A DNA stretch of 64,000 bases from Guillardia theta CCMP2712 (GCF_000315625.1 NW_005434660.1:420711-484710); one strand, 5' to 3'. Shown: positions 43,949 to 64,000, numbered from the stretch's first letter. Translations and numbers: made by a program. The notes: generated by a model from the sequence alone, not told the origin.

Positions 43949-43980
43949 ATCTTCTTCCTTTTAGTCAATAAAACACTTAG

Positions 43981-46900
43981 CTAAGGGAGGAGTAATACTC
44001 TCAAGTTTCCAAGCTGAGCAATTTCTGGTGGAATTCGCTTGATTGGATTGCCTGGATAGGATTAAGTCCAGTGAAAACGAAACGGACTCTCATCACCTTT
44101 CAGCCAGAGTTCGCTGAGCTGTATACAACCTCCGATACCGCTGAAGCCCTCTGAATCGCACTAGGTCAGACCGAAAACTAGCCCCTCAGTTTCTACCTGG
44201 TAGGGACGTTATGAGGTTGTTTGAGAGCGTCAGGGTGCGGAGAGCTTTGAGTTTGCCTATCATGGAAGGCAAAACCTGACCGAGCAAGTTGTCATGTCGT
44301 GTGCCAGATGTGAGCTAGTTTACCTCAATCTCATTGTCATGGAGCCAAAGTTCTTGCAGGTTGGTGAGCTGTCAGGAGTAGTGTCAGAGAAAGATAGATC
44401 TTCACCATCATCAGCACCTGGCAGATGCTCATCGGCAGTGAGTTCAACTTGTTGTGATCAAGATTCAATTCAGTCAAAGTCACGCAACGCCCAATGGAGG
44501 ATGGTATGCTTTCTAGCGCGTTGTGGTCAACCCAGATTTGCTTGATGGACGGTAAATTCCCTAGTTGTCATCCCCTTCAGGTCAACAGACACGCAGAATG
44601 CAGGAAGCACCTATGGTGGCAGGGAGTTCTTTCAACTGATTGTTGCTCACAGCTAACTGCGTCAGCGCACGGAAGTTTCCAATCTTGACCGGCAAAGTTT
44701 CAAGAGCGTTGTCGGAGATGGTGAGAACCTGCAATGAAGGCGTTAAAGACTTTTGCGGTAGATCTTGACAAACCTGCAGGGTGGTGAGGTCCTCAATCAG
44801 TGGCGGGAGTTCGTAGAGGCGATTCGCACTGAGAGACAAGATCTGGAGGTTGAACAACATGTTCATGGAAGCTGGAAGGATCGCAAGTTGGTTTTCTCGC
44901 AGTGACAACTGAGTCAAACTCTCGAGCGAACCAATGGAGGGAGGGAGTTTGACTAGAGCATTCTGAATCAAGTTGAACTTCATCAGATTCTTCAGATTGC
45001 CAACCCCCGGAGGTAGAGAGGTGAGGCGATTCGTTTGAAGCTCCAGCTCAGTGATAGACGTGCAACCCCCCAGCCCTTGAGGAAGAGAAGACAGGCGGTT
45101 CTGCGCCAGAGACAAGTGAGTGAGCGCACTAAGTTGCTTGATGGTGTCAGGCAGGGTGACGATCTGATTGTTGGCAAGAACTAACACCTCAAGGGTGTAC
45201 ATCTCACAGACGACCGCGGGAAATTGCGTGAATTCATTGTTGTTCAAGATCAATTGCTTCAAGTAGCGAGTGAGTATCTCACCCTCGAACATCATCGGGG
45301 GGAGAGAAGACAGCATGTTGTGAGCCAGGTTCATCGACTTGATGAGAGCGAGCTCTGCTATCCTCTTGTTCGCTTCTGTGAGTGTGTTGTGCTCGAAGTT
45401 CAACTCGGTCAAGTTGCTCATCTCAGCGATATGTGACGGGATGCCGACGATCTCGTTCTTGCTCACGTTGAGGGTTCGCAATGAGATGAGGGCAGTCATC
45501 TTTGGGTCCAGGTTCCTCAGCTGATTCCCGGACAGGTCGAGGGAAGTCAGGTACGTCATGTACTCGATCTCCATAGGAAAGCTCTCCAACCCAAGGTTCG
45601 GCATGTCCAGACTGCGGGTCACCCGAGCTTGCAACAGGCAGTGGAAGAAGCTTATAATCGCCTTGGTGCCCAGCGCGACGGTTTCGATAGGAGGCGAAGT
45701 TGTGTGATTGTCTGTGACATCTAGAGTCTCTAGGTTCGTCAGTTTGCCTACAGTCAGCGGGAGGATCGTGAGCTTGTTGCGGTAGAGGAGCAGCTTCTTG
45801 AGCGCCGTCAAGTTCCCAATAGTGCCAGGCAGCGCCTCGAGGTTGTTCACAGCGAGATCGAGATGAGCGAGCGAAGTCAACTCTCCTATGGAGTCTGGCA
45901 GCTTGAGCAGCCGGTTGTTGTTCATGTTGAGGGATGTGATGCAGGTGAAGAGATTGATCCTCTGCGGCAGCGACTGCATCTGATTGTTGGAGAAGTCGAT
46001 ACTGAGCAGATCAGGAAATGCCGCGGCGTCACGAGGAAAGTTAATCATTCCCAAGTCAGCCAGAGCCAATGTATGGTCGGACCTTGCTTCCAAGAACCCA
46101 CGGAAGTAATGCAGAGTTGACTCTGATCCCTTGGCAATCACTTCGTAAGGTGGGGCCTTGCAAGCTTTGTTCTCTGCCAATGCAAACTGTTTGATGTTGG
46201 GCAGCTTGCCAATCTCTATGGGCACCTGGGTGATTTTGTTTCTGGTGAGCTTGCAATCCACAAGTTGCGTACACCGACATAGGTTTCTAGGAACTGTTGT
46301 CAACTGATTTTCAGATGCATCAAGAATTTTCAGTTTGAGCAAACGACCGATGGACGATGGGATAGCCTGTATCTGATTGTGATGCGTTCTAAACTCTTCC
46401 AGGTTGTCAAGATCGCCGATCTCATTGGGGAGACTGGGCAAGCGATTCTTTCCGACGTTGAGGTAAGTGAGCGACGTCAAATTCTGAATCTCAGAAGGCA
46501 GATCATTCAATCTGTTATTCTCAGCGTCTAAGTAGGACAGGCTGACCAGATTGACGAACAAGTTGTCGGGAAACTTAGGGATGTTCTCATTCTCGTTGAA
46601 TTTGAGTATGCGCAACCGAGTCAGGTAGATCAACGTGTTGGGCAACTCTGACAGCTCGTTGTGTGAGAGATCCAAAGATGTCAACAACGTGCAAAGACCA
46701 ATAGCTGAATCCAATTGCGAGATCAGATTCTGGGAAAAATTGATTTCCTCCAGCTGAATGTTGGCTCCAATATTCTCAGGAATTCTTCGGATTCTGTTTT
46801 CACTGATATCCAGTTTCCTTGCTCCATACGGCCCCTGGTCCCCGTTGGGATTTGGAGGTCGGTCAACCAACAGCTCGATGTCGATAGGATACGTTCCAAT

Positions 46901-49900
46901 ATCCTTCTTGTTGTAGATGAACTCATGTTTGCTCCGAGATTGAAGAACATGCGAGCAGAAGTCTATGATAGCCTGCGTTCCTTTGGTCCAAACGTCCCTT
47001 GGCGGCGCTTGTATCGGGTTCCCGGTCACATTCAATTCCCTCAAGCTCTTCTTCAAGTGACCAACTTCGATAGGAATTCTCTTCAGCTTATTGCTCGACA
47101 GCGTTAACGTGTTGAGGCGAGTTGACTTCCAGATGGTATTCGGTATCTCTTGCAACTGATTTCCATCCAGGTACACCAATTCCAGAGAAACGCAATCAAA
47201 GATTTCATCGGGCAGTACTGAAATTTCACAATCGTTTGCTATAATCTTTTTCAATTTCATCAGCTTACCGATAGTCCTTGGGAAAGATCTCAAAGCATTG
47301 TTCTGTACTTCTATCTCCACGACAGATTCCCATTCACCGATCGTTATAGGCAATTCTCTCAGCGAATTCTCGTCAGCCTTGAAGCGATTAATCTTGGTCC
47401 AATTTCCAATCTCACCAGGTAGATACTGCAGTTCATTCTCGCTGATGTCAACTGTAATAAGCTCAACTAAATTTCCAATCTCTTTCGGCAGTTGGACAAG
47501 CACGTTGTCTTGAAGTTTTAACTTTGTTACTGAAGTCAGTAGACCGATGTCCGGCGGGATGGTTCGCATTTCATTGGAAGCCAGGGTAAGGTCTACCAGC
47601 ATCGTCAGGGTACATATTTCACGTGGAAAGAACGCCAGGCCCATCTCACGCAAGTCGAGTCTCTTATACAGCTCTGCTTCCTTGAGAGTCCTCATGTACA
47701 CCATTATCGACTGCGTACCCTCCGAAACGATTTCTGGCGGCGGAGTCTCTAGTTTGTTTCCTGTCACATTGATCACATTGAGGTTGTCACACTGGCACAG
47801 GGCCAGCGGGAGATATTCTATTTGATTGTATTGCACAGACAGCACCTCCAACGCATCCAGTTTTCCGAGCTCCTCCGGCAGATCTTTCAGTTCGTTCTGG
47901 TCGAAGACAAGTTGCTTCAGGTTGTTCAGCTGCTCGATTTCAGGAGGAATCTGCTGAATCTCGTTGTCCACCATCTTGAGTCGTGTGAGATTAGTAAGGA
48001 GGAAAACCTCCACAGGAATGTGTTTCAGTCCCATCTTATCAAGGACAAGATTTCCCGTTTGACGGGCGGCATGCACTCTCTTGATGTAGTTGAGAACAAC
48101 TCCTTCACCACTCATCGTGATGGCTCTCGGAGGAATTCGCAAGCTCTCCACCTCATCCATGATAAACCGCAACTTGGTCAAGACCGTCAGATCGTATACC
48201 TCGATCGATAGCTTCTTGACCTGCGTCAACCTCATCATGCCCTGCGGGAGTGACACCAACGGGTTGGAGGTGCACATCAGCTCAGTCAGACTTGAAAGTT
48301 TGTACAGCTCGAAGGGTAGCAATTCTATCTGATTGTGCGACAGCCATAATTGTTTCAGAAATCCGAAGGATGAAATCTCCTCTGGGATCGATTCCAACTT
48401 GTTGTAAGATAATTTCAAGACTTCAAGAGCGGTGAGTCGCGTGAAGCCATTGGGCAATCTCGTCAACAAGTTGTCACAGAGGTTCAGGCTGATCAAACTT
48501 TCGAGGTGACCAAATCGGTTAGGAAGCTCGTGCAATTCATTATGTAGCAGTTTCAGACGCGTAAGCCTCGTCATTTCATACACTTCTTCGATCAGATATG
48601 TCAGCGACAGCCCTGTAAGGTCAAGGGCATCATCTATCCAGGCCTGTGAAATTCCATTCAAAAATGCCTTCATAGCTGCTGTGCCTTTCAAAACCACTGG
48701 TGGCGGAGGAACAGCGAGCTCGGCGTTGTCATCAACTTCAAGCTTGTCCAGGCTTTTCATCCGTCCCACTGACCAAGGAATCTTCTGCAAACTGTTTCCT
48801 ATCACGCTCAATTCTTCCAGCCAATTCATTTCCCCAATTTCGTCAGGTAGATCTTCAATCAGATTGTCGATAAGCGACAACTTGGTCAGATTGGTAAGTT
48901 TTGCGATCTCCTTGGGGATATGGCGCAACTTGTTGTGATCCAACTTCAATTCTCGTAATTGCCACATTTCCGAGACTGCTGGAGGCAGAATAAGCAGTCG
49001 ATTTTCAGAGGCATTCAGTTCTGTCAGTTGTGTCATTTGTCTGATTGCCAGGGGCAACATTTTGAGCAAATTGTCAGACACATTCAACTTTGTTAGACCA
49101 GGAACTTGGCAGATTTCAAGCGGGATCTGCTGCAGCGCCATCTTGCTCAAATCGATCTCTCGTGTCGACCTGCCTTGAAACATTTCCTTGAGGTATTCGA
49201 CGATGGCAGCTGCGCCTTCTCGAACGATTTCAGCTGGGGGGTTTCGCAAACTTTGATTTTCCGAGTCAACATGCACCATCTGCAGACTTGTGACACATCC
49301 CAGCTCAGCAGGCAGCTGGCGCAATTCGTTTCCAGTGATAGTGAGCTCTTTCAGCCTTGTGAGCTGTGACACAGAGCCTGGCAGCTCGACAAGATAGTTG
49401 TTTGACAGGCTCAGGTGCGTCAAATTGGTCATATTTCCCACTTCCTTTCTCAAGTTGGGAAGTCCGTTCTCATGCAGGACAAGGGTTTCCAACATATCAA
49501 GCTCACAGACCTCTATGGGAACTGTGACCAACTCTTGCCGAGTCAAATCAAGGTATTTGGTCTTGCGCGCTTCAACAATCCTCAACAGATATTGTACTAT
49601 TCCATAAGTTCCCTTGCTGGCAATCTGTGGAGGCGGAGTTTCAAGTTGGGGGTTGTTGTCGATGTAAAGAGCGTGCAAGCGAGTGAGTAGTCCAACTTCA
49701 ACAGGAATCCTTTGCAAGCGATTATGGCTGAGCAACATCTTTTCGAGGTTCGCAAGATTTCCAATCTCCACTGGCAGTGTTGTCAGTTGATTCCAGGCCA
49801 AGTGGAGCTCTTTTAAGGAAGTCAAAGTGCCAATTTGTTTCGGCAGCTCCTCTATTCTGTTTCCAACAAGCTTGAGCACTTCAATCTGCGTGAAAGCTTC

Positions 49901-52900
49901 GATGACAACAGGCATACTTGTCAATCGATTGTCCGACAACCACAGCTCTTTCAATTTTTCGCATCTTCCAATATTTGCAGGAAGACTATTGATCTGATTT
50001 TTTTCCGCCTTTAATGTCACCAGATTTGCTAATAGACCAATCTCAGGCGGAAACGTTTTTAGCTTGTTCTGAGACAATTTCAAAGCTGTGAGAGAGGTCA
50101 TTTGCCCAAGTTCAGGGCCAAGTACCTCGATATCATTGTCTACCAATGACATCGTGGTGACATTGATCAAGAAACGAACTTCTTTAGGAATTTCTGTAAT
50201 CTTGTTGTTCCAAAGCTGAAGTTCTTGCAAAGAAGGGATGGTTGTAATGATGGCAGGTATGGAAAACAAGCCCATACCACTCAAGTCAAGTCGCCTCGTT
50301 TCGCTTGCCTTGTGTATACTTCGGAGAAATCTCAAGGTTGCAGATGTGCCTAATTCCCAAACCTCTTTCGGGGGAGATTTGAGGTCATTTGTATCGAAGA
50401 TCAGCTCCTGTAAATCTGGAATGTCACCAAGCTGCCAAGGAAGACTTTGTAAGGGATTTCCCTGAAGACGAAAGATATTCAAGCTCTTCATTTGTCCAAT
50501 CTCACCAGCGATAGAGTATATCTTGTTGTCTTTCAAAGACAACAACTGAAGGTTACATAGCTTTGCTATCACCGGCGGCATCACTGTGAAGAGATTCTTG
50601 TCCAAAACGAGCTCGCGCAAACTTGTCAGCAATGCAATCTCCCCGGGTAAAGCGTTCAATTCATTCTGAGCAATCCACAAAACCGAGAGTGAAACCAAAT
50701 TCCCAATGAATGACGGTATGGAAGTGAGCAAATTCCAGCTGAGTGAAAGATGTTCTAGGTACCGAAGCTCTCCTATTTCAGGAGGCACAAGGGTAAGTCC
50801 AAATCCTTCCAGACTGAGCTTTTTGTCGAACCGGGAATGATATATGTTCTTCAGGTAGCCCATGATCGCGGGTGTACCCTTGTTGAGGACCTCTTCTGGG
50901 GGGGTTCTGAGATCATCCATGTCCATTTTCAGCTGTTGCAGGTTTTCAAGGAGCCCGAACTCAGCTGGGAGTGCGACAATTCGATTGCCTGCTGCACTCA
51001 ATTCCGTCAGACTTGCAAGCTTTCCTATTTCTGGTGGGAAATTCATCAACCTATTCTTGTCTAATCGTAAATAAGTCAAACTTGTCACATCAGTAACTTC
51101 TTTGGGCAGGTACGTCAAACCATAATTTGATATATCCAGGACGCCTGTCGACCTGGCATCGTAACATCGTTTCATGTACCTGATGCAGTGCATCGTTCCT
51201 TTCTCAAACACAACACGTGGAGGGGAGACCAGGTCTTTGTTGTGGTCTAACATCAAAGCCTCAAGTTGAGATAGTTTGCCCAGCTCCATTGGAATTCGTT
51301 CAAGAGAATTGTTCTGCAACGTAAGTTCTATCAGATTCTCCAGGTCCCCGATCTCCTTTGGCACAGTCTTCAACAAGTTGAATGGCAGCTTCAATTGAGT
51401 GAGAGAAGTCATTGAGCCCATTTCTGTCGGCAGACTTTCAAGTTGGTTGTTCGACAGTCTCAGGTCCTTGCAGCTCACCAGTTGACCCATAACAGGTGGG
51501 AGCTGCATCAAGTTGTTCTTGTGCAACCACAACTTCTTCAAGTGAACCAGCTTGCCAAATTCAGGGATCAAATGAGTGATACTGTTGTTATCCGCTTTCA
51601 AAGATTCCAACTTTGTCATTTGCCCTATGACCGGAGTCAACTTTGTGAAATCATTGTATGAAATTCTCAATTTCCGCAAGTTCAAAAGCTTTCCCATTTC
51701 TGGGGGCAGCACAGATATCTTGTTATCAATCACTGACAGAGAAGTCAATTTGAGCAGACCTCCAATCGCCGATGGTAAGTTTGTTAAGTTATTCTTGAAC
51801 AACTTCAGTTGAGTCAGATTCGTCATTCGCACAACCTCAATCGGGACAAAAGTCAACCCATTGCAGCTCAAATCCAATTTTGCTGTCCATTTGGCTCTAT
51901 TGAATTTCCTCAAATAATCCAAGATCACCACAGCCCCCTTATCCACCACCTCTCGAGGGGGAACCTCAAGGGAATCATTGTGACTGGCATCAACAAATTC
52001 TAACTTGGTCAGCCAACACATGTCTGAAGGTAATGCTTCTATCTTGTTGTATGCTATGCTGATTTTTTTCAGGTTGTAAAGCTCCAATGCAGGACGTGGA
52101 AATTCCTCGAAGACATTGTTATCAATATCCAATTCTTCTAAGTTTTGCAAGCGAGCAAATTCGGAAGGAAGGCTGTCAAGTTGATTGGCAGTCAAGTACA
52201 AGTATTTGAGACTTGTCAAAGTAGCTAACAGGGGGGGAATTTCTGTAATGTGATTCTCAACCAGGGATAAGCTGGTCAAATCAGTCAGCAAGAAAACAGA
52301 ATATGGAACGCTGCGAAGTAAATAGCCGTCGAGGTTCAAAATATTGCTCCTCTCTGCTTTTCCAATTTTATCTAGATAGACCACTATCTCTTGTGTGTTC
52401 TGTTCTGCGAGCATCAAAATCTCTGACGGTGGATCTTTCAATTCATTTCCATCGAGCGTGAGAGTTACCAACTTCGTCAGATTTCCCATTGAGGAAGGAA
52501 GAAATGTTAAAAGGTTGCGGTCAAGGTGAAGGGCAGTGAGGTTGGTAAATGAGCCAATTACAGCATCAACCTCCGCAAGGAGATTGTCATTCAGTGATAA
52601 TCCAGTTATGTACTGCATGTCAAGGATTTCAGGTGGCAGAAACGACAACTTCATATTATCCATGAACAAAAGCTGGGTCGTTCTTGCCTCCAAAATCCTT
52701 CCCAGGTACTCGATGATCACGTCACAACCTTGATCAAGAATCAACTTCGGTGGTTTCTCCCACGGGTTCGACTCAAGCGCAAGGTCGGTCAGGTTGGTAA
52801 GTCTTCCCATTTCGGGTGGAAGAACTTCGACCTCATTGTGATCGATGAGAATCTGAGATAGATGAGTAGCATTTCCAATCTCATGCGAAATCTTGCATAT

Positions 52901-55900
52901 GGTATTGTAAGAACATTGCAAGGTTGTCAGACTAGACAGACTGCCGACACCAAGTGGAATTGCGGTCAACGAGTTGTGAGATAAGATCAAAGATCTCAAA
53001 GATCTCATGTTGTGCACTGCAGGAATCAAAATTAAACTATTGAACTCAAGATTCAAATACTCCAGAGCTGTCATGTTCATCAAGGACATGGGCAAATTCT
53101 GCAAATTGTTATGGTCTATTTGTAAAATTCTGAGGTTGATTAGTTCTCCAAACTGATTCGGCAGGGACTGTATCATGTTCATGTCTGCTCGCAGCTCAGT
53201 CAGCGATGACAAATGTACGAGCTTGTCGGGGAGGATCTCAATGTTGTTACGGGATATGATGAGCGAGGCTAGATGCTGAAGTTGCCCCAACTCATCTGGC
53301 AAGTCCTTCAAGATGTTATCTGACAAGGCCAACGACGTCAAGGCAGTAACTTTGCTTATCGTTGGCGGCAAATGTTTCAGATTGTTGTTGAACAATTTCA
53401 TTTCGGACACATCGGGCAGGATCGTTGAAATCAAGGGAAAATTGGGATTTCCCATGCTGCTCAAATCAAGACAGTTGTTGTAGCGAGCGTTATGAACATT
53501 TCTGAGAAATCGGAGTATCTGGTCAATGCCTTGTTCAATGACCTCCCGTGGCGGTATTTTCAAGATCTCTTCATCGATTGCCAACTGCTTCAGGTTGGTC
53601 AGCAAACCCATTTCATAAGGCAACATCTGAATGTTGTTCTCCCGGAGGGATAAGAATTCTAGATTTGTCAAGTTTCCGATCTCAGGCAATATCGTTTCAA
53701 TCCCATTTTCATCCAGATCTAAGGACTTCAATGAAGAATAATATTGAATGGTTGACGGTATTGTATTCAACTTGTTTTTCCTCAACGAGATATGAGTCAA
53801 ATTCGTCAAACTCGATGAATCTGCGGGCAGAGATCTTAGCTGATTGCCGTCCAGCAGTATGCTGGATATTCTTGTTATTTGTGTCACCTCATTTGGCAAG
53901 AATGTGAGACCGAAATTTCTAAGATCTAACATCCCCGAATCGTGCGCTTTAAGAAGGGAGCGCAAGTATGCGATGATAACTGTCGGGCCTTGCGCAATCA
54001 CGTCATGCGGAGGGGAGCTGATATCGTGGTTCCCGTCCAGGTTCAACTCTTCCAGTTTTTCCAACAACCCAAGTTCAATGGGCAAACTGGTCAATTCATT
54101 GTAGGATATACTGAAAGACGAAAGATTAGAAAGCTTTCCTATGCTTTTTGGCAAGGTTCTTAGATTGTTGTCAACAAAAGACAATTCTGTCAAATTGCAC
54201 AAGTTAGAAATCTTCTCTTGCACTTCCGTTAGTTGATTGTCGGTGAGTGACAGTCTGGTCAACGATGTAAGATTCAAAACTTCTGGAGGAATACGTTCAA
54301 GACTGAGGCCCATCAAATCCAACGACTTGGTATTCCTTGACTGAAATACTCTTGTAAGATAATCCAAAACCAATTTCGAGCCTTGCTTTATAATATCTGC
54401 TGGAGGTGATTGAATATCGTTGCCGTCAATCAACAGCATTGCAAGACTATTAATGTTTCCCAGTTCCACAGGAAGTACCTTAATCTTGTTATCTGTTAAA
54501 GATAACTCTGATAGATTTGTCAATTGGCCAATCTCAGAGGGCATAAAGCCGATGGCATTCCCTGCAATTCTGAATCGGTTGAGAGTTGTCAGATTTCCAA
54601 TCCCAGGAGTAAGGAATTGGATTTGGTTGTAAGAGAGGTGAAGTTCTGTCAATGAAGTAAGAGACTCAATCTGTTCTGGGAAAAGCTGAAGTTTATTGTA
54701 TGACAAGTTCAGCACTGCCAAGTTAGTCAAGGCTGATATGGACTCAGGAATCATGGAAAGCTGGTTTGAATACAGTTCAAGAACTTGAAGACTTGTCATG
54801 AGCCCAAGGAAACTCGGTGCCTGCTCCATTTGGTTGTTATCAGCCTTGAGATGTTCCAAGTAGATCAAGCTACAGATAGAATTAGGTAATTCACGGATTG
54901 AATTGCCAGAAATATCAAGAAACACCAACTTTGTCAACTGATCAATTTTGGTCGGAACCTCTGTCAAGTTGTTTCTAGCCAGTGAAAGATTGGTAATGTT
55001 GGTCAGAGCAAAAATTTCGGCAGGTACCGATGGGAGTCCCATGCTGCTCATATCCAGATATCCTTCCTTACGACGCATGCTGTCAAGCATTCTTTTCAGA
55101 TAGTCCAAGACTGCAGAGGAGCCCTCAACCTGGATTTCTTTTGGAGGCGAAACCAATTCAGGATTATTCTGGAATGCCAAATTCTCGAGAGTGCTTGCCA
55201 GTAACCCGAGTTGAGGCGGCAAAGCTTTCATCTTGTTGTTTGTGACCGAAAGCTTTGCAAGTGAAGTCAAGTTTCCAATAGTTTGGGGTAGCATTGTTAA
55301 ATTGTTGTTGTCGAGAAGAAGCTTGTTCAAATGAGACAGGTTGCCAAGGCCATTTGGCAAACTTTCGATTCTGTTGTTATGCAACCATAGCTCGTTGAGA
55401 TTGACCATCTTTCCAATGTCTTCAGGTAAACTTCTTAACTTATTCCCTGTCAAAGAGATTTCAGACAAAGAATGCATTTCCAGCACATGTTCAGGAAGTT
55501 CCTTCAGCCCCATGTAGCTCAAATCCAGCTTGTGAGTCATTTCAGACATATCAATCCTCTTCAAGTATTTGAGAATCATTGGTATGCCTCGAAGATTCAC
55601 TTCAGGGGGGGGGATCTTGATGTTTCGGAATTCATCGATTTGTATGTCTGTCAATGTGGTGATGTTTCCTAATGCTGGTTCAAGCTCCGTGATTGGATTG
55701 TTGTCTAGAATCAAACTGGTTAAGTTTGTCAAGTTTCCAATCATTTTGGGCAAAGTCGAAATCTTATTGAATCTCAGATCCAAACACGTTAGATCGGTAT
55801 ACTCCTTGCAAATGTCAAATGGAATCTCTACCAGTTCTAGGTGGGTAAGATCAAAAACTTTCGTCTCGATGCCATTCAAAATTCGTCTCATGTAGGAAAG

Positions 55901-58900
55901 AATACCAGGTGTTCCTTGTCTTAAAATCGTTGGAGGAGGATCATGAATTTCTCGATTACTGGATATGATCAACTTTTCGAGGAATTTCAAGTGCCCCAGC
56001 TGTACTGGAAGGCTTTGCAGCTCGTTGTGCTCCAAAGAAAGGAATAGCAACTTCTCGATCTGACCTATCTCGCGTGGCAGCCCTTGCAGTAGATTGTGAG
56101 ACAGGTTTAGTTTCTCGAGATTGCTCAGGTTGCCAATGGCCGGCAACACAACCCGCAGCTTGTTGTTGGACATATCTAACGAGACAAGCCGACTTAAACT
56201 TCCGATGAAACTGGGCATCTCTTCTAAAGAGTTGTGATCCAACTGAAGGAATCTCAAGTTCTGAAGGTTCGCAAGTTCGTGCGGAGTATCATTCAACTTG
56301 TTGTAAGACAAAGTCAATCTCGTAAGTGAAGTACACAATCCAAGTTCCGACGGGAGATGGTGAATGGCATTGTCCTCGAGATTGAACTCCAGCAACTGTT
56401 GAAGCTTCATTATTTCAGGGGGCAACGTAGGTACCTGGTTGTTAACCATTTGCAAATCGGTCAAATTTGTCAGATTGCAGACTTCCTGAGGAAAGTTCTT
56501 GAATTGGTCGGCATTCAGTTCGAGGCGACAGGTCCTTCGAGATTCGAAAATTTTCTGCAAATAATCAAGAATTTTCGACACCCCTTGAACCATCACGTCC
56601 TCCGGTGGAGAGATTAAAGGATTGTGATCTAAATCCAAAATCTTCAGGGATCTGAGAAATCCCAATTCAGGGTTGAGCAGCGAAATCTGATTATTCCTCA
56701 AACTCATTTGTTTCAGATTTCTGAGCTGGCCGAGTCGTTCAGGAAGGGCGATGAGCTCATTATTGAACAATTGCAACTCTTCCAACTCAAGAAGATCTCC
56801 AACGGAGGGAGGCAAGATGGCTAGTTGATTATCATTTAGAAAAAGCTTTTTCAACCCCTGAAAATTTCCAATACCTGATGGAATCATTTGCAACATGTTT
56901 CCTGCTAGTGACAGCTCAGTTAAGTTCGTCAACAGCAAAACATCAGTTGGAATGGTGTGAAGAGACATGTTGCTCAGATCGAGACGTCCCGTACTTGAAG
57001 CATTATAAATCTGGACCAAGTATTCCAGAACCACTGATGTTCCTCTCTCAATCAATTCCTTGGGGGGAGACTCCAATTCGTTATTTTCAAGTGAGAGGAC
57101 TGTGAGGTTTGTGAGAAGTCCAACTTCTGATCTAACATGTACCAGTTTGTTCTCCGACAATCCTAATACTTCAAGTTGGGTCAAAGAGAGTATTGACTCT
57201 GGCAAGATCTCGAGAAGATTGTCATCCAATAAGAGCTCCTTCAGATGTGTCAAAAGCCTGAGATCATCTGGAATTCTTCCAAGTTTGTTGCTACACAGCG
57301 CCAAGGAAGTCAAATTTGGCATCTCAAAAACTTCTGGAGGTACTCTGCTCAGTCCCATATCAGACAAGTTCAAAGCGGCTGTCTGCTTGCCCATCAGAAA
57401 ACGATACAAATACTCAACAATCTTTTCACACCCTCCATTCAATATTTCTGGCGGGGGCATTGAAATCGGATTCTGCGATACATCCAACTCTCTCAAACTG
57501 GACAAAACACCAAGCTCGTAGGGAAGTTTTCGAATTTGGTTCTTCGCAAGATGTAGAATGTCAAGGGTAGTTAGCTGGCTAATGATTTCTGGAATCGATG
57601 ATAGCTGATTGTTAGAAAATCGCAACTCGGTGAGCTTATACAAATATCCGACTGATTCAGGAAATTTTTCGAAAAGATTCTCTCCCATTCTCAAATCTGT
57701 CAGGCTGCTGAGGTTTCCAAATGAGTCAGGTAGTGTGGAAAAGCTGTTGTGTTCCGCCCAGAATTCCAACAAAGAGCTGAGATTACCAATCGATTCAGGC
57801 AAAAGATGCAGTTTGTTGTTGTCCAAATGTAGATACTCCAAACTCGGCAAGCATGAAAAGTCAATGTCCAGCTTTTGCAAAGAATTGTGGGACAACGAGA
57901 GTGTATGGAGGTCACTGAGTTTCTCAACAGCTCGCGGAATGCTCTCCAGTTCATTCTTGGTAGCCAGCAGCTCCCTCAAACTTGTCAGGTTTTTAATGTC
58001 CTCGGGGATGCACCGGATTTTGTTCTGAAACAGATTCAGTTTCGTTGCATTCACAAGATTTGTAACTTCCATTGGAATGATTGAAAGGTCAAGACAACTC
58101 AGATCAATCACTCCTGTTTGCTTGGCCTCCTTTATTCGCCTGAGATACTCCAGGATCAGCGACATTCCCCTCTCTACAATTTCTTTCGGTGGTGAACGCA
58201 GTTGAAAATTTTGGTCCAAATTTAGCAGTTCCAGATGAATGCAATCTCCCAATTCTACTGGCAGCGTAACTAAGTTGTTACCTGATAGGTTGAGATTATG
58301 AAGGGAGGTCAACTGCCCAATGGTGGCCGGAAGAATTAGGACATGATTGTTTGACACTGACAATTCCTTGAGCATTTTCAAGTTGGACACCGCATCCGGT
58401 ATTGTGTCAATATTGTTATGATCCAAGTTCAAATAAGTCAATGAAGTCATCAAGCACACCTCATTCGGTAGAATGCTAAGTTCAAGTCCACTGAGGTCCA
58501 AGTGTCCCGAGAGAGATCCCTCCCACAAACGTCGCAGGAAGGCAATCACTGACGAGCTTCCCTTGCTCTGGATTGAGAGCGGGGGAGATTCGAGTTGGTT
58601 ATCTTCAAAGACGATGGAGTTGAAGCTTTCCAGGCTTCCAAGAATAGATGGGAGCTCCTTCAGGCGGTTGGACGAGATGTTCAAGTGCTGCAAGCATTTC
58701 AGCATTCCAATGGTGCTCTCGATGTGCTGAATCTTGTTCTCGGCCAGGTGCAATGATTCGATGTGCGTCAGCTCAAAGATTTCTTCAGGAATCTTCATCA
58801 GTCCAAACCTTGACAAATCGAGTGATCGAGTTTCTACTGCGGTGCAGAGCCTCCTAAGATATTCCATGATTACACGATGTCCACGTAGAATAATCTCTGG

Positions 58901-61900
58901 TGGAGGGGCAGAGAGCTGAGGATTGTTTTCGATTGACATCGACCGCAGCGACGAGATGAGACCTAAATCAATTGGCAAACGCTCCAGCTTGTTGTTATGC
59001 AAGGACAGCTCGGTCAAATTCGTTAATCCCTTGAATCCGCCAACAAATGTTGGGAGACTTTCTCCAGAAACTTCTTTGGGGAAATTCAATCCACTAGGAA
59101 GCATTTCGAGTTCATTGAAATGTGCCTGGATCCGTGTGAGAGAAGTCATGTACTCGATCTCATTGGGCAAACGTTTCAACTTATTGTTGGAAAGGTTCAG
59201 ATCGACACACTTCTCGAAACTCGCGAATGATTCTGCAGGCAACATGTCTAATGCATTGTTGGCAAGAGAGATCTTCGTTAAGCTTGTCAGTCCGTTGATC
59301 TGATTAGGCAAATAGTTCAAAGCGTTTTCTTCAATCACCAAAGATTGCAAAGCCTCCATTTTCCCAACAGTCTCTGGAATATATTCCAATTCATTCTCGC
59401 TCAAGTTTACTTCAACCATCTTGAGCAGATTTCCGATGTCTCCAGGCAGCGTCTTAATCCGATTGTTGACTAAATACAATCCCTCCAGATTCGTTAGGAA
59501 GATTATTTCAGGAGGTAGTTCTCTTAACATGTTGAAGGAAAGATCGAGCTTTCGAAGGGAAGAAAGCATAGAAATGCTGTCTTCCAAAACAACAATCTTG
59601 TTCCTGCTCATATCAAGATTTGTAAGATGAGGTATAAGAGCCCCCGGTGGCTCATCGCAGAATTTACCGGTTCCTGATAGGAGCTCGACTGGAATGGATT
59701 CCAATGCATCTCCACTCAGATTCAAAGTGCCATCGTCGTATGCCTGAAAGACAGATACAAGATATCTGAGAATACTCGAGATACCCGAATTGAGAATAGA
59801 TTCAGGGGGTGATTCCAATGGGTTGGATTGAAATTGCAACGAAGTCAAGTTCGTTAAAGTGCCTAACCAGACTGGGATCCTCTGAATTTTGTTTCCGCTG
59901 ATTGACAGATTAGTCAAATTTGTGAGATTAGCCATGCCTGCCGGTAAAGTTTCAAGCAGATTGCCACTTACTGAAAGATTAGAAAGTAAGGTGAGGGTTT
60001 GGATTTCGCCTGGCAACTGTCGTAGCTTGTTGTCATTCAAGTTCAGAGATTGTAAGTTCCACAAATCTGTGATATGCAAAGGAAACGCTAATAGACCATT
60101 ATGTCCTAAGTCATCTCGTGAAAAGTTCAAGCTATTTGTTGTACGAGCATTGAATAGTCTTCTCAAATACCCCAGAATTCTGGGAGTTCCTTCTGCAATG
60201 ATTTCTGGTGGTGGAAATAATAATTTTGGTGCATCAAAGGTCAGTTCCTCTAAACTTGTTAAAATTCCTAGCTCCCAAGGCAAATCAACAATATCGTTGC
60301 TTGCCAAGTACAGTTTCTGCAGATTTGAACAAAATCCAATCTCAGCCGGTAGCCTACCATCAGTCTCTGATCCAATCTTATTTCTTGAGAGATCAAGAGA
60401 AACTAAATTCCCGAGAGATCCGACAAGCGTCGGCAGAAGTTTCAGATTATTGCCAGCAAAGTTCAAGACTTGCAAACGAGTCAAGTCAAAAAAAGCGTCA
60501 CAGACGACTCTAAGATGATTATTTTCTAGAGATAAAGATTCGAGATTTTTGAGCATCACAACTTCTTCAGGAATGGCAGGTATTACATTTCCTGCCAGGT
60601 TTAGGTGTTGGACAAAAGAGCTTTCCAACAACTCCGGAGGAAAATGTGTCAAAGCATAGTTTCTAAGATCCAGCGATTTGCTAACCCTTGCATTGAGATA
60701 CCTTCTCACGTATTGAAGTATTTCTCTTCCAGTCAATTTCATTATTTCAGGTGGAGGCGATCTCCAAGGGTTTCCTGAGACCTCAAAAGTTTCCAGAATT
60801 TCGCAATTTCCGATCTCCACTGGCATCACTTCCAATGAATTATTGGTGACAGTTAGAGTCTCGAGCAAAGTCAGTTGGCAAAGGGCTTTTTCGAAAGACT
60901 GAAGCTTATTGCCATCCAATTTCAAATGCTTTAACCGTGTAACTTTCCCTAAGTTCGGTGGAACTTGTTCTAACTTGTTATTCATCGCAGATAGGTTTGT
61001 TAAGAACTTGATTTTTTCGATTTCTGGGGGAAGCTTGAAAAGTGAATTGTTATTTGCATCAAGATATGTCAGATTTATCCAATTCTGTGCACAAGACCCT
61101 GGAATTTCAGTAAGAGAATTGAAAGATACATCCAGTAATTGCATGCTAGTAAGGGTTTTGGCATTCGGTGGTATTGCCTCAATCAGATTGTTTTGTAAAA
61201 ATATTTTCTCGAGCGTATGCGATTTTACGCCTACAAATTCTGGCCATTCAATCAAACCATAATTGCTTAGATCCAAATTTAAAGATTTGCGTGATATGTA
61301 CAAAGCATGCAAATATCTCATGGAAACTTCACTGCCTTCATTCGTTACTTGCTTGGGGGGAAAGACTAAATTGTTTCCATCCAAAAGTATGTTGAGATTT
61401 GTTAACTTCCCAAGATCAGACGGCAAGGCTTGCAATCTGTTATTTGAAACATCTAGTTCTGTCATATCTGCCAGAAGTCCCAATTCTTGAGGCAGCTTTG
61501 AAATCTTATTACTGTTAAGGAGGAAACTTTGCATTTGTCCCTGAGCTTTGATTGTCGAGGGGATCGTGGCTAGATTATTGTTACAGAAGTTAAGAACTTT
61601 TAGCTCTCCAAGATTGGTCATGTTTGAAGAGTATACACTGATTTCATTGCTGTCCAAATTGAGCATTCTCAAAGATAACAATTCCATGACTTCCTCAGGA
61701 ATTTCTTTCAAACGAAACCTACTTAGATCCAGCTCGTGAGATGACCGTGCACTATACATACGACGCAAATAATCAATTACAACTGCGGGTTCTTGCTTTG
61801 TCACATCTGGAGGAGGCCGTTCTAGTTTGTTATTTGCAAAGTCCAAGTCCGTCAACATCGGAAGTGCACCCAATTCATGCGGCAAATTTTTAATGGCGTT

Positions 61901-64000
61901 GAAGCCTAGTTTGATCTGCTTTAAACGAGAGAACAGTTTGATTTCCTCAGGAATGTCTTTAATTCTGTTGAATTCGAGGTTCAAGGAGGTCAGAAGTGTG
62001 AGATTCCGTATTTCGACAAAGTCTAACTTCTTCAAAAGATTGTTTGAAGCGTCTAACTCTGTTAAGCTTGTAAGAACTTGGTTGATCTCCGATGGAATAG
62101 CGCGGAGATCCATTCCATTCAAATCCAAAAATTTTGTTTCCAAACCAGTTGTGAACTTATCCATGTATTCCAAGATCGCTCCAATGCCCTCCTTAACAAT
62201 CTCTACCGGTGGGTCCTTCAAATCGTTTCCACCAATTTGAAGTCTAGTCAATTGTCGAAGATTCCGAAATGTTAGTGGAAGCCTCCTTATCAGATTCGAA
62301 TCAAATGCCAAGAAACTCAAGTCGTTCAGATCTCCAAGCGAATTTGGTAGTGTAGGTATCCTGGAAAGATCGATAGAATCACCACATCGAGAAGAGGCAA
62401 AAAAGAACGGCTTACCTGTTAAATGAGACATTCAAATGATGCAGTTCAGTACACGCTCCTATTTCTGCCGGAAGTTTGTTGATCGAATTATGACTTACAT
62501 CCATATACGTTAAAGCTTGAAGGTTTCCTATTTCAGCTGGCAGCTTTTTAAGCCGATTTCCCGGTACTCTTAGCAATTTCAAAGATTTGAGTGTAGCAAA
62601 ATGATGTGATAATCGGGTCAACTGATTATCTGCCATGGATAATTCTTCCAGACATCCAATTTTTGCAATTGAATGAGGGAAAGCTTGTAACAAATTCTCG
62701 TCTAAATTGAGTCGTTTCAATCTCATACCTTCCAAGTCATCAGGTAAAAACCTGTCAAAAGAGCAGTAAGATCTTCGTTATGGGTTGGAAGATATACTCA
62801 CTTTAGTTTGTTCTTTTGCATCGACAATTCCTCCAAGCTTGTTAGACGACCCAAGCTGCCTTCGGGAACTTCTTTGATACCATTTCCATCTAGATACAAG
62901 ACTCGAAGGAATTCTAATTCAGAAACTTGGGATGATAATTTATCCAATTGATTGGAATTGAGCATTAGAACTTGAAGCGTGCTCATTTGCCCCAACACCT
63001 GCATGGTGATTTAGAAAACCTTTTAAGAAGGAACAGGCATTTCACCGCTGGAAACTTGTTGAAGCTGTTATTATTCAATTCAAGATGTGTGAGTGCAGTG
63101 AGCTCGGCTGATTGATCTGGCAAAGTTCGTAGGGCATTACCATTGAGAATTAATTTCACAATATACGGAACGTGCCATATTTCACCAGGCATTTCTGAAA
63201 CACCAAGTGCGTTAAAGTTCAAGATTTTGGTTTTCTGTGCATATATAAATTTCTGGAGATACTCCTTAATCATTGATGCTCCTTGCTTCACAACTTCAGG
63301 TGGTGGGGACGAGATTGCATTACCAGCAGCATCGAAATCTTCAAGTCGATCAAGCATTGCCAAGGCAAGTGGAAGCCTACGCAGCTTGTTGTCCGCGATC
63401 GATATTTTGCGAAGATCCTTGAGCTGCCCAATCCAATTTGGAATGTCCATGATTTCGTTTGACGAGATTTGGAGCTCTTGCAAGCAAGTCAGCTCCCGAA
63501 TAACCTCAGGCATTCGGAGAAATTTGTTGCTATTGACGCTCAATCGTTCTAAAGTTGGAGCCCACTGAACCAAGTCTTCAGGGAGAACCTTCAAATTGTT
63601 ATCAGACAGTTTCAGCTCTTCTATGTTTGATAGTTCTAAGCATTCGGCAGGAATCTCACTCAGATTCAGATGTCGAAGGTCGAGAATCTTGTCGTTAACA
63701 GCCCTGTGAAGCCTTTGCAGATACTTGATTGATGCTTGCATCCCTTTAGCACGTATCCAGTCTGGTGGCACTTGTAATTCATTATGATCGATCATCAACT
63801 CTCGAAGCATGGTGCATTGTCCAAGAGAATATGGCAACTTAGTCAAGCGGTTTTCAGACAGAGACAGCACAGACAACTGAGTGCAGTTGCCTATCTCCTC
63901 CGGTAGGTCTTCCAACTCATTGTTTTGGATCCATAAAACTGAAAGTTTCTGCAAATTCGAAATTGACGACGGTATTTCCTTGATGTTATTATTATACAGC
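43981..64000 (-). CDS. Giant modular LRR protein (>6500 aa, 5' end outside the window)
   Basis: 5949-aa ORF plus upstream exons (three short introns near 63000, 62780 and 62361-62415) and several small 3' exons ending ...ELWLKGNPIKRIPPEIAQLGNLRVLLLP* (TAG 43981-43983). 23-aa SHOC2-like LRRs throughout, punctuated by 34 NxLxxPPxE(I/V)xxxGxxxIxxYL motifs. Confidence 0.95.

What the first reader, a model, noticed from the sequence alone, without database searches (positions are those of the whole stretch)
43981..64000. Giant LRR-only protein with a hidden 3-module (~510-aa) super-repeat
Seen: the protein is a chain of LRR modules separated by 34 copies of NxLxxPPxEIxxxGxxxIxxYLxRxxxAxxTxxLDLS. 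Counting LRRs between linkers by eye, N to C: 6,13 | 5,6,8 | 7,5,11 | 4,5,10 | 5,6,9 | 4,6,10 | 5,6,11 | 4,6,10 | 4,7,10 | 5,7,8 | 5,10,11 | 6,~20. Every third module is the longest for 11 consecutive cycles. Every-third linkers lie at about 62207, 60752, 58905, 57455, 55935, 54405, 52750, 51222, 49632 and 48130, i.e. about 1540 nt (20-21 LRRs) per cycle in the core. The units are highly diverged at DNA level, so the register is old and probably selected. No catalytic domain follows; the chain ends in an LRR. Established: titin and nebulin use super-repeats to match filament periodicity. Inference: an LRR-based molecular ruler or filament scaffold for a periodic cell structure (axoneme, flagellar root, periplast), or a multi-epitope receptor array. 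I know of no described LRR protein with this organisation.
Basis: partly seen in the sequence, partly recalled or inferred. Interest (0 to 1): 0.9.

Follow-up and report, generated by a model that had tools for sequence, protein, structure and literature searches.

The report
Giant LRR chain, three-arc length rhythm
One expressed 20-kb gene of a cryptophyte-type alga encodes a 6,646-residue protein made only of 35 leucine-rich-repeat arcs whose sizes run short-medium-long eleven times. Related species keep those sizes almost to the residue, yet the arcs share no matching sequence rhythm, so the pattern is real and conserved but is not shown to be a molecular ruler.

Summary
On the minus strand, a 10-exon gene runs from its stop at 43981 to its start 356 nt beyond the window. 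It is assembled as a single 20.1-kb mRNA contig in runs of two studies. It encodes 6,646 aa: a 65-aa helical head, then 35 LRR arcs of strict 23-residue repeats, joined by 34 Roco-type cap helices.

Arc lengths follow short-medium-long in 11 of 11 triplets (permutation p about 1e-5; autocorrelation 0.6-0.7 at lags 3, 6 and 9).

Arcs i and i+3 are no more alike than any other pair in five different tests, and the tree of joints is a star. Triplet length is not constant (483-660 aa).

Metagenomic orthologues at 55-62% identity keep every measured arc length. There are five one-residue indels in 4,580 aligned residues and no LRR-sized indel. Concave-face residues are better conserved than convex ones.

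Best reading: a giant cytosolic multivalent LRR scaffold whose three-arc rhythm is the frozen trace of old block duplication, with each arc's size under constraint. A titin/nebulin-like ruler fails two defining features but is not excluded.

The scan had already found a smaller member of this unstudied family elsewhere in this genome.

The parts
63046..64000 (-). Exon 1, the part inside the window. It continues to the ATG at extended coordinate 64356 (G000:C14:485066). It encodes the 65-aa helical head, arcs 1-2 and the start of arc 3.
   Evidence: Frame translation of L001 and the window. The head and first arcs are 60-70% identical in orthologues.
62999..63045 (-). Intron 1 (47 nt, GT..AG)
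   Evidence: Sequence read. The spliced frame restores the LRR register.
62802..62998 (-). Exon 2 (inside arc 3)
62752..62801 (-). Intron 2 (50 nt, GT..AG)
62416..62751 (-). Exon 3 (inside arc 3)
62361..62415 (-). Intron 3 (55 nt, GT..AG)
44774..62360 (-). Giant exon of 17,587 nt: end of arc 3 through most of arc 35, with 32 of the 34 joints
   Evidence: Open frame. RNA contigs run unbroken over 44771-48999, and their total length fits no further intron.
47999..58930 (-). Most regular core: super-repeats 4-10 (arcs 10-30), 483-551 aa each
51089..52777 (-). Super-repeat 8 (arcs 22-24: 107, 157 and 246 aa) with flanking caps; this is the segment that was modelled
   Evidence: AlphaFold2 gives pLDDT 93.3 and pTM 0.78. 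Each joint is a short helix plus a 17-residue helix that runs into the first strand of the next arc.
44729..44773 (-). In-frame 45-nt intron hidden inside the long open frame
   Evidence: The joint is seen in contigs of three runs. Its removal restores a regular LRR.
44611..44728 (-). Exon 5
44561..44610 (-). Intron (50 nt)
   Evidence: Predicted; spliced in RNA contigs
44418..44560 (-). Exon 6
44324..44368 (-). Exon 7 (introns 44369-44417 and 44276-44323 flank it)
44197..44275 (-). Exon 8
44097..44150 (-). Exon 9 (introns 44151-44196 and 44052-44096 flank it)
   Evidence: raw RNA reads also cross both joints
43981..44051 (-). Last exon. The protein ends ...GNPIKRIPPEIAQLGNLRVLLLP, with stop TAG at 43981-43983.
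43944..43980 (-). 3' UTR up to the end of the RNA contigs
   Evidence: table 8

Best explanation
This is one gene for a 6,646-residue protein with no signal peptide or membrane segment visible by eye, so it is probably cytosolic. It consists of a conserved 65-aa helical head and 35 separate LRR arcs of 3 to about 20 turns of a strict 23-residue SHOC2/RSU1/Roco-type repeat.

Each arc is closed by the cap that, in Roco proteins, sits between the LRR domain and the Roc GTPase. Here the 17-residue cap helix runs straight into the first beta-strand of the next arc, so the cap serves as an inter-arc joint.

Shown: the anatomy; single-transcript expression; the short-medium-long order of arc sizes repeated 11 times; near-absolute conservation of every measured arc length in orthologues; and better conservation of arc-specific concave-face residues than of convex ones.

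Inferred: each arc is a distinct, conserved docking surface, and the protein works as a giant multivalent scaffold or adaptor. The three-arc rhythm is the frozen footprint of an old burst of tandem duplication of a three-arc block. Sequence memory of that burst has since been erased. The rhythm survives because gain or loss of whole LRR turns in any arc is selected against, not because the period itself measures anything.
For: One gene:
- RNA contigs of 20,111 and 20,112 nt from runs of two studies carry all six 3' introns. Their length fits the model with a 5' UTR of about 130 nt.

LRR-only:
- Pfam finds only LRR families.
- In the PDB, the cap half of the joint matches the LRR-Roc linker of Chlorobium tepidum Roco (5il7, 6hlu, 3dpu, 8r4b; E about 1e-7 to 1e-6).

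Structure:
- AlphaFold2 gives pLDDT 93 and pTM 0.78 for one super-repeat.
- The whole model superposes on SHOC2 only at rmsd about 21 A. The long arc with its caps fits RSU1 at 2.3 A. So there are three separate arcs, not one horseshoe.

Rhythm:
- 11 of 11 triplets, p about 1e-5.

Constraint:
- The orthologue on a JGI contig aligns to aa 252-2869 at 55% identity with four one-residue gaps, and to aa 2898-4861 at 61.5% with one. Joint spacings match the window's (within 1 aa) for arcs 3-15 and 18-26; the other intervals are blurred by introns or an undetected joint in the orthologue. Colinear exon hits reach aa about 6,471.
- Identity to the orthologue is 74% at core positions, 51% at concave variable positions and 41% at convex variable positions. 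The same variable positions are only about 10% identical between units of the protein.

Burst-like origin:
- The joint tree is a star, with end branches of about 0.9 and no starred inner branch.

Family:
- At least 15 other multi-arc LRR loci in the same genome use the same joint and the same 23-aa size quantum.
- Most of these paralogs have orthologues at 41-50% identity elsewhere, with arc lengths largely kept.
Against: - No sequence trace of block duplication survives, so that origin is inferred from lengths alone.
- If the ancestral short, medium and long arcs had already diverged before the duplications, class-specific residues should remain. None do.
- In paralogs the period-3 order is weak and not individually significant. 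This gene is therefore unusually regular, which could point to selection on the order itself.
- No binding partner, location or phenotype is known.
- Beta-strand positions may be better conserved for structural reasons alone.
- The arrangement of two super-repeats is not confidently predicted (pTM 0.45).
Confidence: 0.55

Rival explanations
1. Geometric ruler or lattice element. The fixed short-medium-long arc sizes build a defined repeating three-dimensional unit that matches a periodic cell structure such as flagellar apparatus, rhizostyle or periplast.
For: - The period-3 length pattern is very non-random.
- Arc lengths are frozen in orthologues at 55-62% identity.
- The seven core super-repeats vary by only 4%.
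- Local joints are predicted as ordered helices, and pTM is 0.78 for one unit.
- The mRNA contig has 5-20 times the word depth of the neighbouring gene's contig, which is a poor measure.
- LRR arcs of this subtype do occur in axonemal cryo-EM models: 8glv_Eb, and LRRD1 in 9ijj and 9fqr.
Against: - There is no position-specific sequence conservation between super-repeats, unlike titin and nebulin.
- Super-repeat length ranges from 483 to 660 aa and is not more constant than shuffled triplets (p = 0.11 in the core, 0.79 overall).
- pTM falls to 0.45 for two units.
- Length stasis is shared by paralogs that lack the rhythm.
- No localisation data exist.
Confidence: 0.13
2. The three arcs of each triplet pack into one compact functional unit, and the order short-medium-long is itself selected. 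The pattern would then be convergent or maintained, and not merely inherited from duplication.
For: - This gene is far more regular than its paralogs.
- No duplication signal is left, although the order is perfect.
- pTM is 0.78 for a three-arc unit but 0.45 for six arcs.
- In paralogs a medium arc is followed by a long one 17 times and by a short one 3 times.
Against: - I could not inspect coordinates for inter-arc contacts.
- The drop in pTM may only reflect chain length and a six-row alignment.
- The first, third and eleventh triplets deviate in size.
- No class-specific residues exist that could form conserved inter-arc interfaces.
Confidence: 0.15
3. An array of pathogen- or ligand-recognition receptors, that is an immune-type LRR repertoire as proposed for brown-algal ROCO genes.
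For: - LRR expansions are typical of immune repertoires.
- The genome holds at least 15 such giants and at least 14 COR-domain (Roco) genes.
- Brown-algal ROCO LRRs are discussed as candidate receptors (PMC11378527, title and abstract listed).
Against: - There is no signalling domain, membrane anchor or NB-ARC/NACHT module.
- LRR number is frozen between species rather than variable.
- Concave-face residues are more conserved than convex ones, the opposite of diversifying selection.
- There are no DNA-level repeats or cassette structure in this gene.
Confidence: 0.07
4. The rhythm is a chance arrangement or a counting artefact.
For: - The pattern was first counted by eye.
- Size classes overlap: short is 107-181 aa, medium 131-246 aa and long 192-314 aa.
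Against: - 0 of 200,000 shuffles reach 11 of 11 in any frame, and lag-3 autocorrelation has p about 5e-5.
- Lengths come from profile-anchored joints, not from eye counts.
- The same lengths recur in two orthologue contigs.
Confidence: 0.02

Closest known systems
SHOC2 / RSU1 / Leptospira LIC-type 'typical' 23-residue LRR proteins
   Same: Same repeat type and fold. Foldseek top hits are SHOC2 (27% identity). RSU1 fits the long arc plus caps at rmsd 2.3 A with Z 26. The Pfam families are LRR_8, LRR_4 and LRR_14.
   Different: Those are single arcs of 7-20 repeats.
Roco proteins (Chlorobium tepidum Roco, LRRK2 family): the LRR C-terminal cap and LRR-Roc linker
   Same: The first half of every joint matches the LRR-Roc linker of CtRoco: 6hlu residues 440-472, the end of the 5il7 LRR construct, and the start of 3dpu.
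   Different: There is no Roc GTPase and no COR domain anywhere in the protein. The cap is followed by another LRR arc, 34 times. COR-domain genes exist, but at other loci.
Titin and nebulin super-repeats (from general knowledge)
   Same: A higher-order period is laid over a simple domain repeat in a giant protein.
   Different: In titin and nebulin the super-repeat is seen as sequence similarity between equivalent positions, and its length is constant and matched to a filament. Here equivalent arcs are no more alike than others, and unit length varies from 483 to 660 aa.
STT super-motifs of TLR7/8/9 and small leucine-rich proteoglycans (Matsushima et al., PMC1899181)
   Same: A period-3 super-repeat inside LRR proteins, read as short-typical-typical.
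   Different: Those units are three single LRRs (about 80 residues) and are visible in sequence dot plots. Here the unit is three whole LRR domains (about 510 residues) and is visible only in domain lengths.
Slit (four tandem LRR domains; from general knowledge)
   Same: Several capped LRR domains in a row within one chain.
   Different: Slit is secreted, has four domains with cysteine-rich LRRNT/LRRCT caps, and also carries EGF and laminin-G modules. This protein has no visible signal peptide, helical Roco-type caps, 35 domains and nothing else.
Unnamed family of giant LRR concatemers in this genome and in marine protists (scan finding s1-430541; P0004, P0144-P0146, and P0149 labelled Hanusia phi)
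   Same: Same joint, same 23-aa quantum, LRR-only, no enzymatic domain.
   Different: This is the largest member seen (35 arcs). It is the only one with a strict period-3 size order. In paralogs the order is partial and not significant.

Membership tests
LRR superfamily, 'typical' 23-residue class | Tandem LxxLxLxxNxL motifs with a period of 23-24 residues that form a beta-strand/helix solenoid | tested here: met
   151 regular units are spaced exactly 23 aa apart. Asn at position 9 is present in 99%. Pfam LRR_8 E = 1e-57 to 1e-67. The AlphaFold2 model has strand/helix periodicity and SHOC2 and RSU1 as best folds.
Roco (ROCO) proteins | Roc GTPase domain followed by a COR domain | tested here: not met
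   Pfam finds only LRR families in the three pieces scanned (the first and last 1,000 residues of the long frame and most of exon 1); the middle was not scanned with Pfam. The rest of the chain is accounted for by 35 arcs and 34 joints. COR-A matches in the genome lie at other loci.
Roco (ROCO) proteins | LRR domain closed by the NPLxxPPxEI...G..AI..YL cap helix | tested here: met
   The profile of 32 joints hits CtRoco chains 3dpu, 6hlu, 8r4b and 5il7 over profile positions 3-35.
Titin/nebulin-type super-repeat rulers | Domains at equivalent super-repeat positions are more similar to each other than to their neighbours | tested here: not met
   - Same-class versus different-class identity: 0.309 vs 0.311 and 0.331 vs 0.330.
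- No lag-3 excess in register.
- Joint tree label changes: 17, against 16.1 when shuffled.
- No signal at orthologue-conserved sites.
Titin/nebulin-type super-repeat rulers | Constant super-repeat length | tested here: inconclusive
   Sums are 483-660 aa (CV 11%). In the core seven units they are 483-551 aa (CV 4%). They are not more constant than class-wise shuffles (p = 0.79 and 0.11).
Titin/nebulin-type super-repeat rulers | Binding along a filament with a matching period | not testable with these tools
   No localisation or interaction data.
Giant LRR concatemer family of cryptophytes and marine protists (unnamed) | LRR-only chain of many arcs, each joined to the next by a Roco-type cap helix plus an LDLS first strand | tested here: met
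   34 joints in this protein. The same joint occurs in at least 15 other loci of the genome and in database proteins P0004, P0001-3, P0005 and P0144-P0153.
Immune-type LRR receptors (NLR, RLK/RLP, algal ROCO candidates) | Signalling or anchoring module, and variable LRR number or hypervariable concave face | tested here: not met
   No such module was found in the pieces scanned. LRR number is unchanged across the 4,580 residues aligned with the orthologue, arcs 3-27. Concave positions are more conserved than convex ones, 51% vs 41%.
Slit-like extracellular multi-LRR proteins | Signal peptide and cysteine-rich LRRNT/LRRCT caps | tested here: not met
   The N-terminus is a polar helical head with no hydrophobic leader. 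Caps are Cys-free helices. Cys makes up 1% of residues. No signal-peptide predictor was run.

The most novel reading that the evidence does not exclude
The sizes of the 35 arcs form a conserved structural code. The short-medium-long triplet would be a building block that folds the 6,646-residue chain into a defined periodic super-structure, used as a ruler or lattice for a cryptophyte-specific periodic organelle (periplast plates, rhizostyle or flagellar apparatus). It would be a ruler that keeps geometry but not sequence.
Probability: 0.13. Interest if true: 0.85.

Novelty: new variant of a known kind. Interest (0 to 1): 0.6.

Why it matters
LRR domains are normally single arcs that read one ligand. 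Here evolution has turned the Roco cap into a joint and chained 35 arcs into one of the largest LRR-only proteins on record. It has also kept every measured arc's size fixed across species while the sequence drifted to 55-62% identity.

A domain-level, length-only super-repeat is not described for LRR proteins in the literature I could search. It gives a clean case for asking whether repeat-protein geometry can be under selection independently of sequence. It also points to an unstudied family of giant scaffolds in cryptophytes and other marine protists.

If the ruler reading proved true, it would be a new principle for cellular length measurement. If not, the gene is still a useful model for how tandem arrays freeze.

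Tried and rejected
**Sequence echo of the super-repeat.** I looked for it in six ways, all negative:
- local alignment scores of whole arcs;
- identity of the first and last 80 aa by class;
- 69-aa window dot-plot maxima;
- in-register versus shifted identity of LRR cores;
- a maximum-likelihood tree of 34 joint-centred segments with label-change counts;
- identity restricted to orthologue-conserved variable sites.

Only a weak effect of equal LRR number on C-terminal similarity appeared (2%, p = 0.003).

**Compensation between arc lengths within triplets.** Not significant.

**Class-specific net charge.** Short arcs are slightly more acidic (p = 0.02), but this is confounded by the share of cap residues in short arcs. 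Orthologue identity does not differ by class.

**Period-3 order in paralogs.** Suggestive runs occur in C176, C8 and C46 but are not significant.

**Hidden in-frame introns at irregular LRRs.** The candidate at 46818-46871 is excluded by unbroken RNA contigs. The one at 59030-59071 is unverified.

**Database searches for a giant orthologue.**
- The search in the 3,254-10,353 aa range found only paralog-level hits.
- The representative-library search also found only paralog-level hits, probably because clustering at 50% identity hides near relatives.
- A search with aa 2900-4890 missed the orthologue's 1,985-aa frame.
- The metagenome scan for the rest of the JGI contig returned unrelated loci. 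I reached the rest of that contig by walking with exact proteins instead.

**ESM Atlas fold search.** It found only single-arc LRR clusters.

**AlphaFold2 of two super-repeats.** It gave no confident global shape (pTM 0.45).

**Literature.** Searches for a described protein of this kind found none.


Full report
**Gene and transcript**

The window's minus strand carries a 5,949-codon open frame at 44582-62431. LRR coding continues upstream and downstream in other frames. I read the junctions and fetched 1.5 kb beyond the window. This gave a model with GT-AG introns of 45-55 nt and a start codon 356 nt past the window end.

RNA data confirm the model. Logan contigs of 20,111 nt and 20,112 nt, from runs of two studies, cover 43944 to beyond 48999 as one molecule. 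All five 3' introns I predicted are spliced exactly. The contigs also reveal one more in-frame 45-nt intron, at 44729-44773, hidden inside the long frame. Contig length fits the model with a 5' UTR of about 130 nt and no further intron.

The product is 6,646 aa. Pfam finds nothing but LRR families in the three pieces scanned, the first and last 1,000 residues of the long frame and most of exon 1. The neighbouring plus-strand gene ends about 100 nt away and is convergent.

The genome is 87.1 Mb in 669 contigs. The nearest named relative of a paralog is Hanusia phi. I therefore infer a Guillardia-type cryptophyte; I did not verify the name.

**Anatomy**

A profile of the joint finds 34 full copies and an N-terminal half copy, giving 35 arcs. 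LRR units are strictly 23 aa, so arc lengths fall on a ladder of about 38 + 23n aa (107, 130, 153 ...).

In the PDB, the first half of the joint matches the LRR-Roc linker of Chlorobium tepidum Roco. The second half matches an ordinary first LRR.

AlphaFold2 models super-repeat 8 with mean pLDDT 93.3 and pTM 0.78. Each joint is a short helix plus a 17-residue helix that leads directly into the first strand of the next arc. The whole model fits SHOC2 only at rmsd about 21 A. The long arc plus caps fits RSU1 at 2.3 A. The chain is therefore a series of separate arcs, not one solenoid. A six-arc model keeps local confidence (pLDDT 88) but not global confidence (pTM 0.45).

**The rhythm**

Arc lengths in aa are 153,154,314 | 132,152,201 | 181,135,301 | 107,131,245 | 130,153,223 | 109,155,247 | 131,153,267 | 107,157,246 | 107,176,246 | 132,177,192 | 130,246,284 | 153,456.

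- The third arc is the longest in 11 of 11 triplets.
- The order short <= medium < long holds in 10 of 11 triplets.
- None of 200,000 shuffles reaches this in any frame.
- Length autocorrelation is 0.61, 0.70 and 0.55 at lags 3, 6 and 9.

With the first arc added, the register starts at the N-terminus. There is no DNA-level repeat.

**No sequence echo**

They do not.

- Same-class and different-class identities are equal: 0.309 vs 0.311 for the first 80 aa and 0.331 vs 0.330 for the last 80 aa.
- There is no lag-3 excess in register.
- The best 69-aa matches, at most 50% identity, show no class preference.
- The maximum-likelihood tree of joints is a star. Class labels change 17 times, against 16.1 +/- 1.6 when shuffled.
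- Restricting to variable sites that are conserved in the orthologue gives the same answer.
- Triplet length is 483-660 aa and is not more constant than shuffled triplets.

**Orthologues**

A search with the N-terminal exon found fragments at 62-70% identity. Their contigs carry the orthologous gene. I walked along a 35-kb JGI contig by exact-protein look-ups.

- The orthologue aligns to window residues 252-2869 at 55% identity with four one-residue gaps.
- It aligns to residues 2898-4861 at 61.5% identity with one one-residue gap.
- Joint spacings match the window's within 1 aa for arcs 3-15 and 18-26. The other intervals are blurred by introns or an undetected joint in the orthologue.
- Irregular arcs such as 201, 181, 135 and 301 aa are matched within one residue, and the orthologue shows a counterpart of the odd truncated LRR in arc 30.
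- Colinear exon hits continue to residue about 6,471.
- Intron positions differ strongly: the orthologue's 3' third is split into many LRR-sized exons. These are therefore different genomes.

By LRR position, identity to the orthologue is 74% at core sites, 51% at concave variable sites and 41% at convex variable sites. It is 63% in the cap helix. The same variable sites are only about 10% identical between units of the protein. Arc-specific concave faces are thus under purifying selection.

**Family**

The joint profile hits at least 150 places in this genome. They cluster in at least 15 other loci with 3-31 joints each and the same size ladder. Most of these paralogs have orthologues at 41-50% identity in public data, with arc lengths largely kept.

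The period-3 order is only partial in the paralogs and not significant. There is a directional bias: a medium arc is followed by a long one 17 times and by a short one 3 times.

The scan had already described an 18-arc member elsewhere in this genome. COR-domain genes exist at other loci.

**Reading**

The data fit a giant multivalent LRR scaffold in which each arc is a conserved, distinct docking surface of fixed size. The rhythm is most simply the fossil of a burst of three-arc block duplications that later froze; the star tree fits a burst.

Known rulers are recognised by position-specific sequence similarity and constant unit length. Neither holds here, so I do not file this protein as a titin/nebulin-like ruler. 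I cannot exclude a geometric role. An immune-receptor reading is disfavoured by frozen LRR numbers and conserved concave faces.

**Literature**

Searches found LRR super-motifs only at the level of three single repeats, namely STT in TLR7-9 and the small proteoglycans (PMC1899181). I found no description of this architecture.

Noticed in passing
window 39620-43439 (+ strand): Three identical sets of ORFs recur at exactly 1,500-nt spacing, in a stretch with GC 0.58-0.60 and GC skew +0.32. RNA contigs of the plus-strand gene show a 'goes back 770' joint there and end near 43843. This is a very recent tandem amplification inside the convergent neighbour gene, also noted by other first-stage readers.
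   Followed up: partly
window 44729-44773: A 45-nt in-frame, stop-free intron is hidden inside the 5,949-codon open frame. It is visible only in RNA contigs. ORF-based models of such genes can carry unspliced 15-aa inserts.
   Followed up: yes
L029:19500-23452 and L030:7800-20363: In the orthologue, the last roughly 1,800 codons are split into dozens of exons of about 20-60 codons (one or two LRRs each). The window gene has a single 17.6-kb exon over the same region. This is a large difference in intron content between orthologues.
   Followed up: partly
extended window 64162-64356 (L001:2663-2857, minus strand): The 65-aa non-LRR head (…LGAMLKASAAQQ…SFLAAARAAKARQEA…) is conserved in orthologues P0290/L028. 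It ends in a helix that mimics the cap helix before arc 1. It could be a targeting or dimerisation element.
   Followed up: partly
PDB chains 8glv_Eb, 9ijj_4X, 9fqr_Xo: LRR arcs of this subtype occur in axonemal cryo-EM models: the Chlamydomonas 96-nm doublet repeat, and LRRD1 in mammalian sperm central apparatus and doublets. The long arc fits 8glv_Eb at rmsd 2.5 A with Z 26.9. This shows a shared fold only; it is a lead, not evidence of location.
   Followed up: no
G000:C176:50700-68100 (L002-L004): A second very large paralog has at least 31 joints and partial 131-153-223 triplets. Like the window gene, it had no orthologue above 35% identity in the searches run.
   Followed up: partly
G000, 14 loci, e.g. 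C86:77277-77699: At least 14 COR-A domain matches above the Pfam cut-off show that the genome also has a sizeable Roco family.
   Followed up: no
window 43601 and 43603: One RNA contig (X1) reads G instead of A at two places 2 nt apart near the 3' end of the neighbour gene. This could be a strain difference, an error or editing.
   Followed up: no
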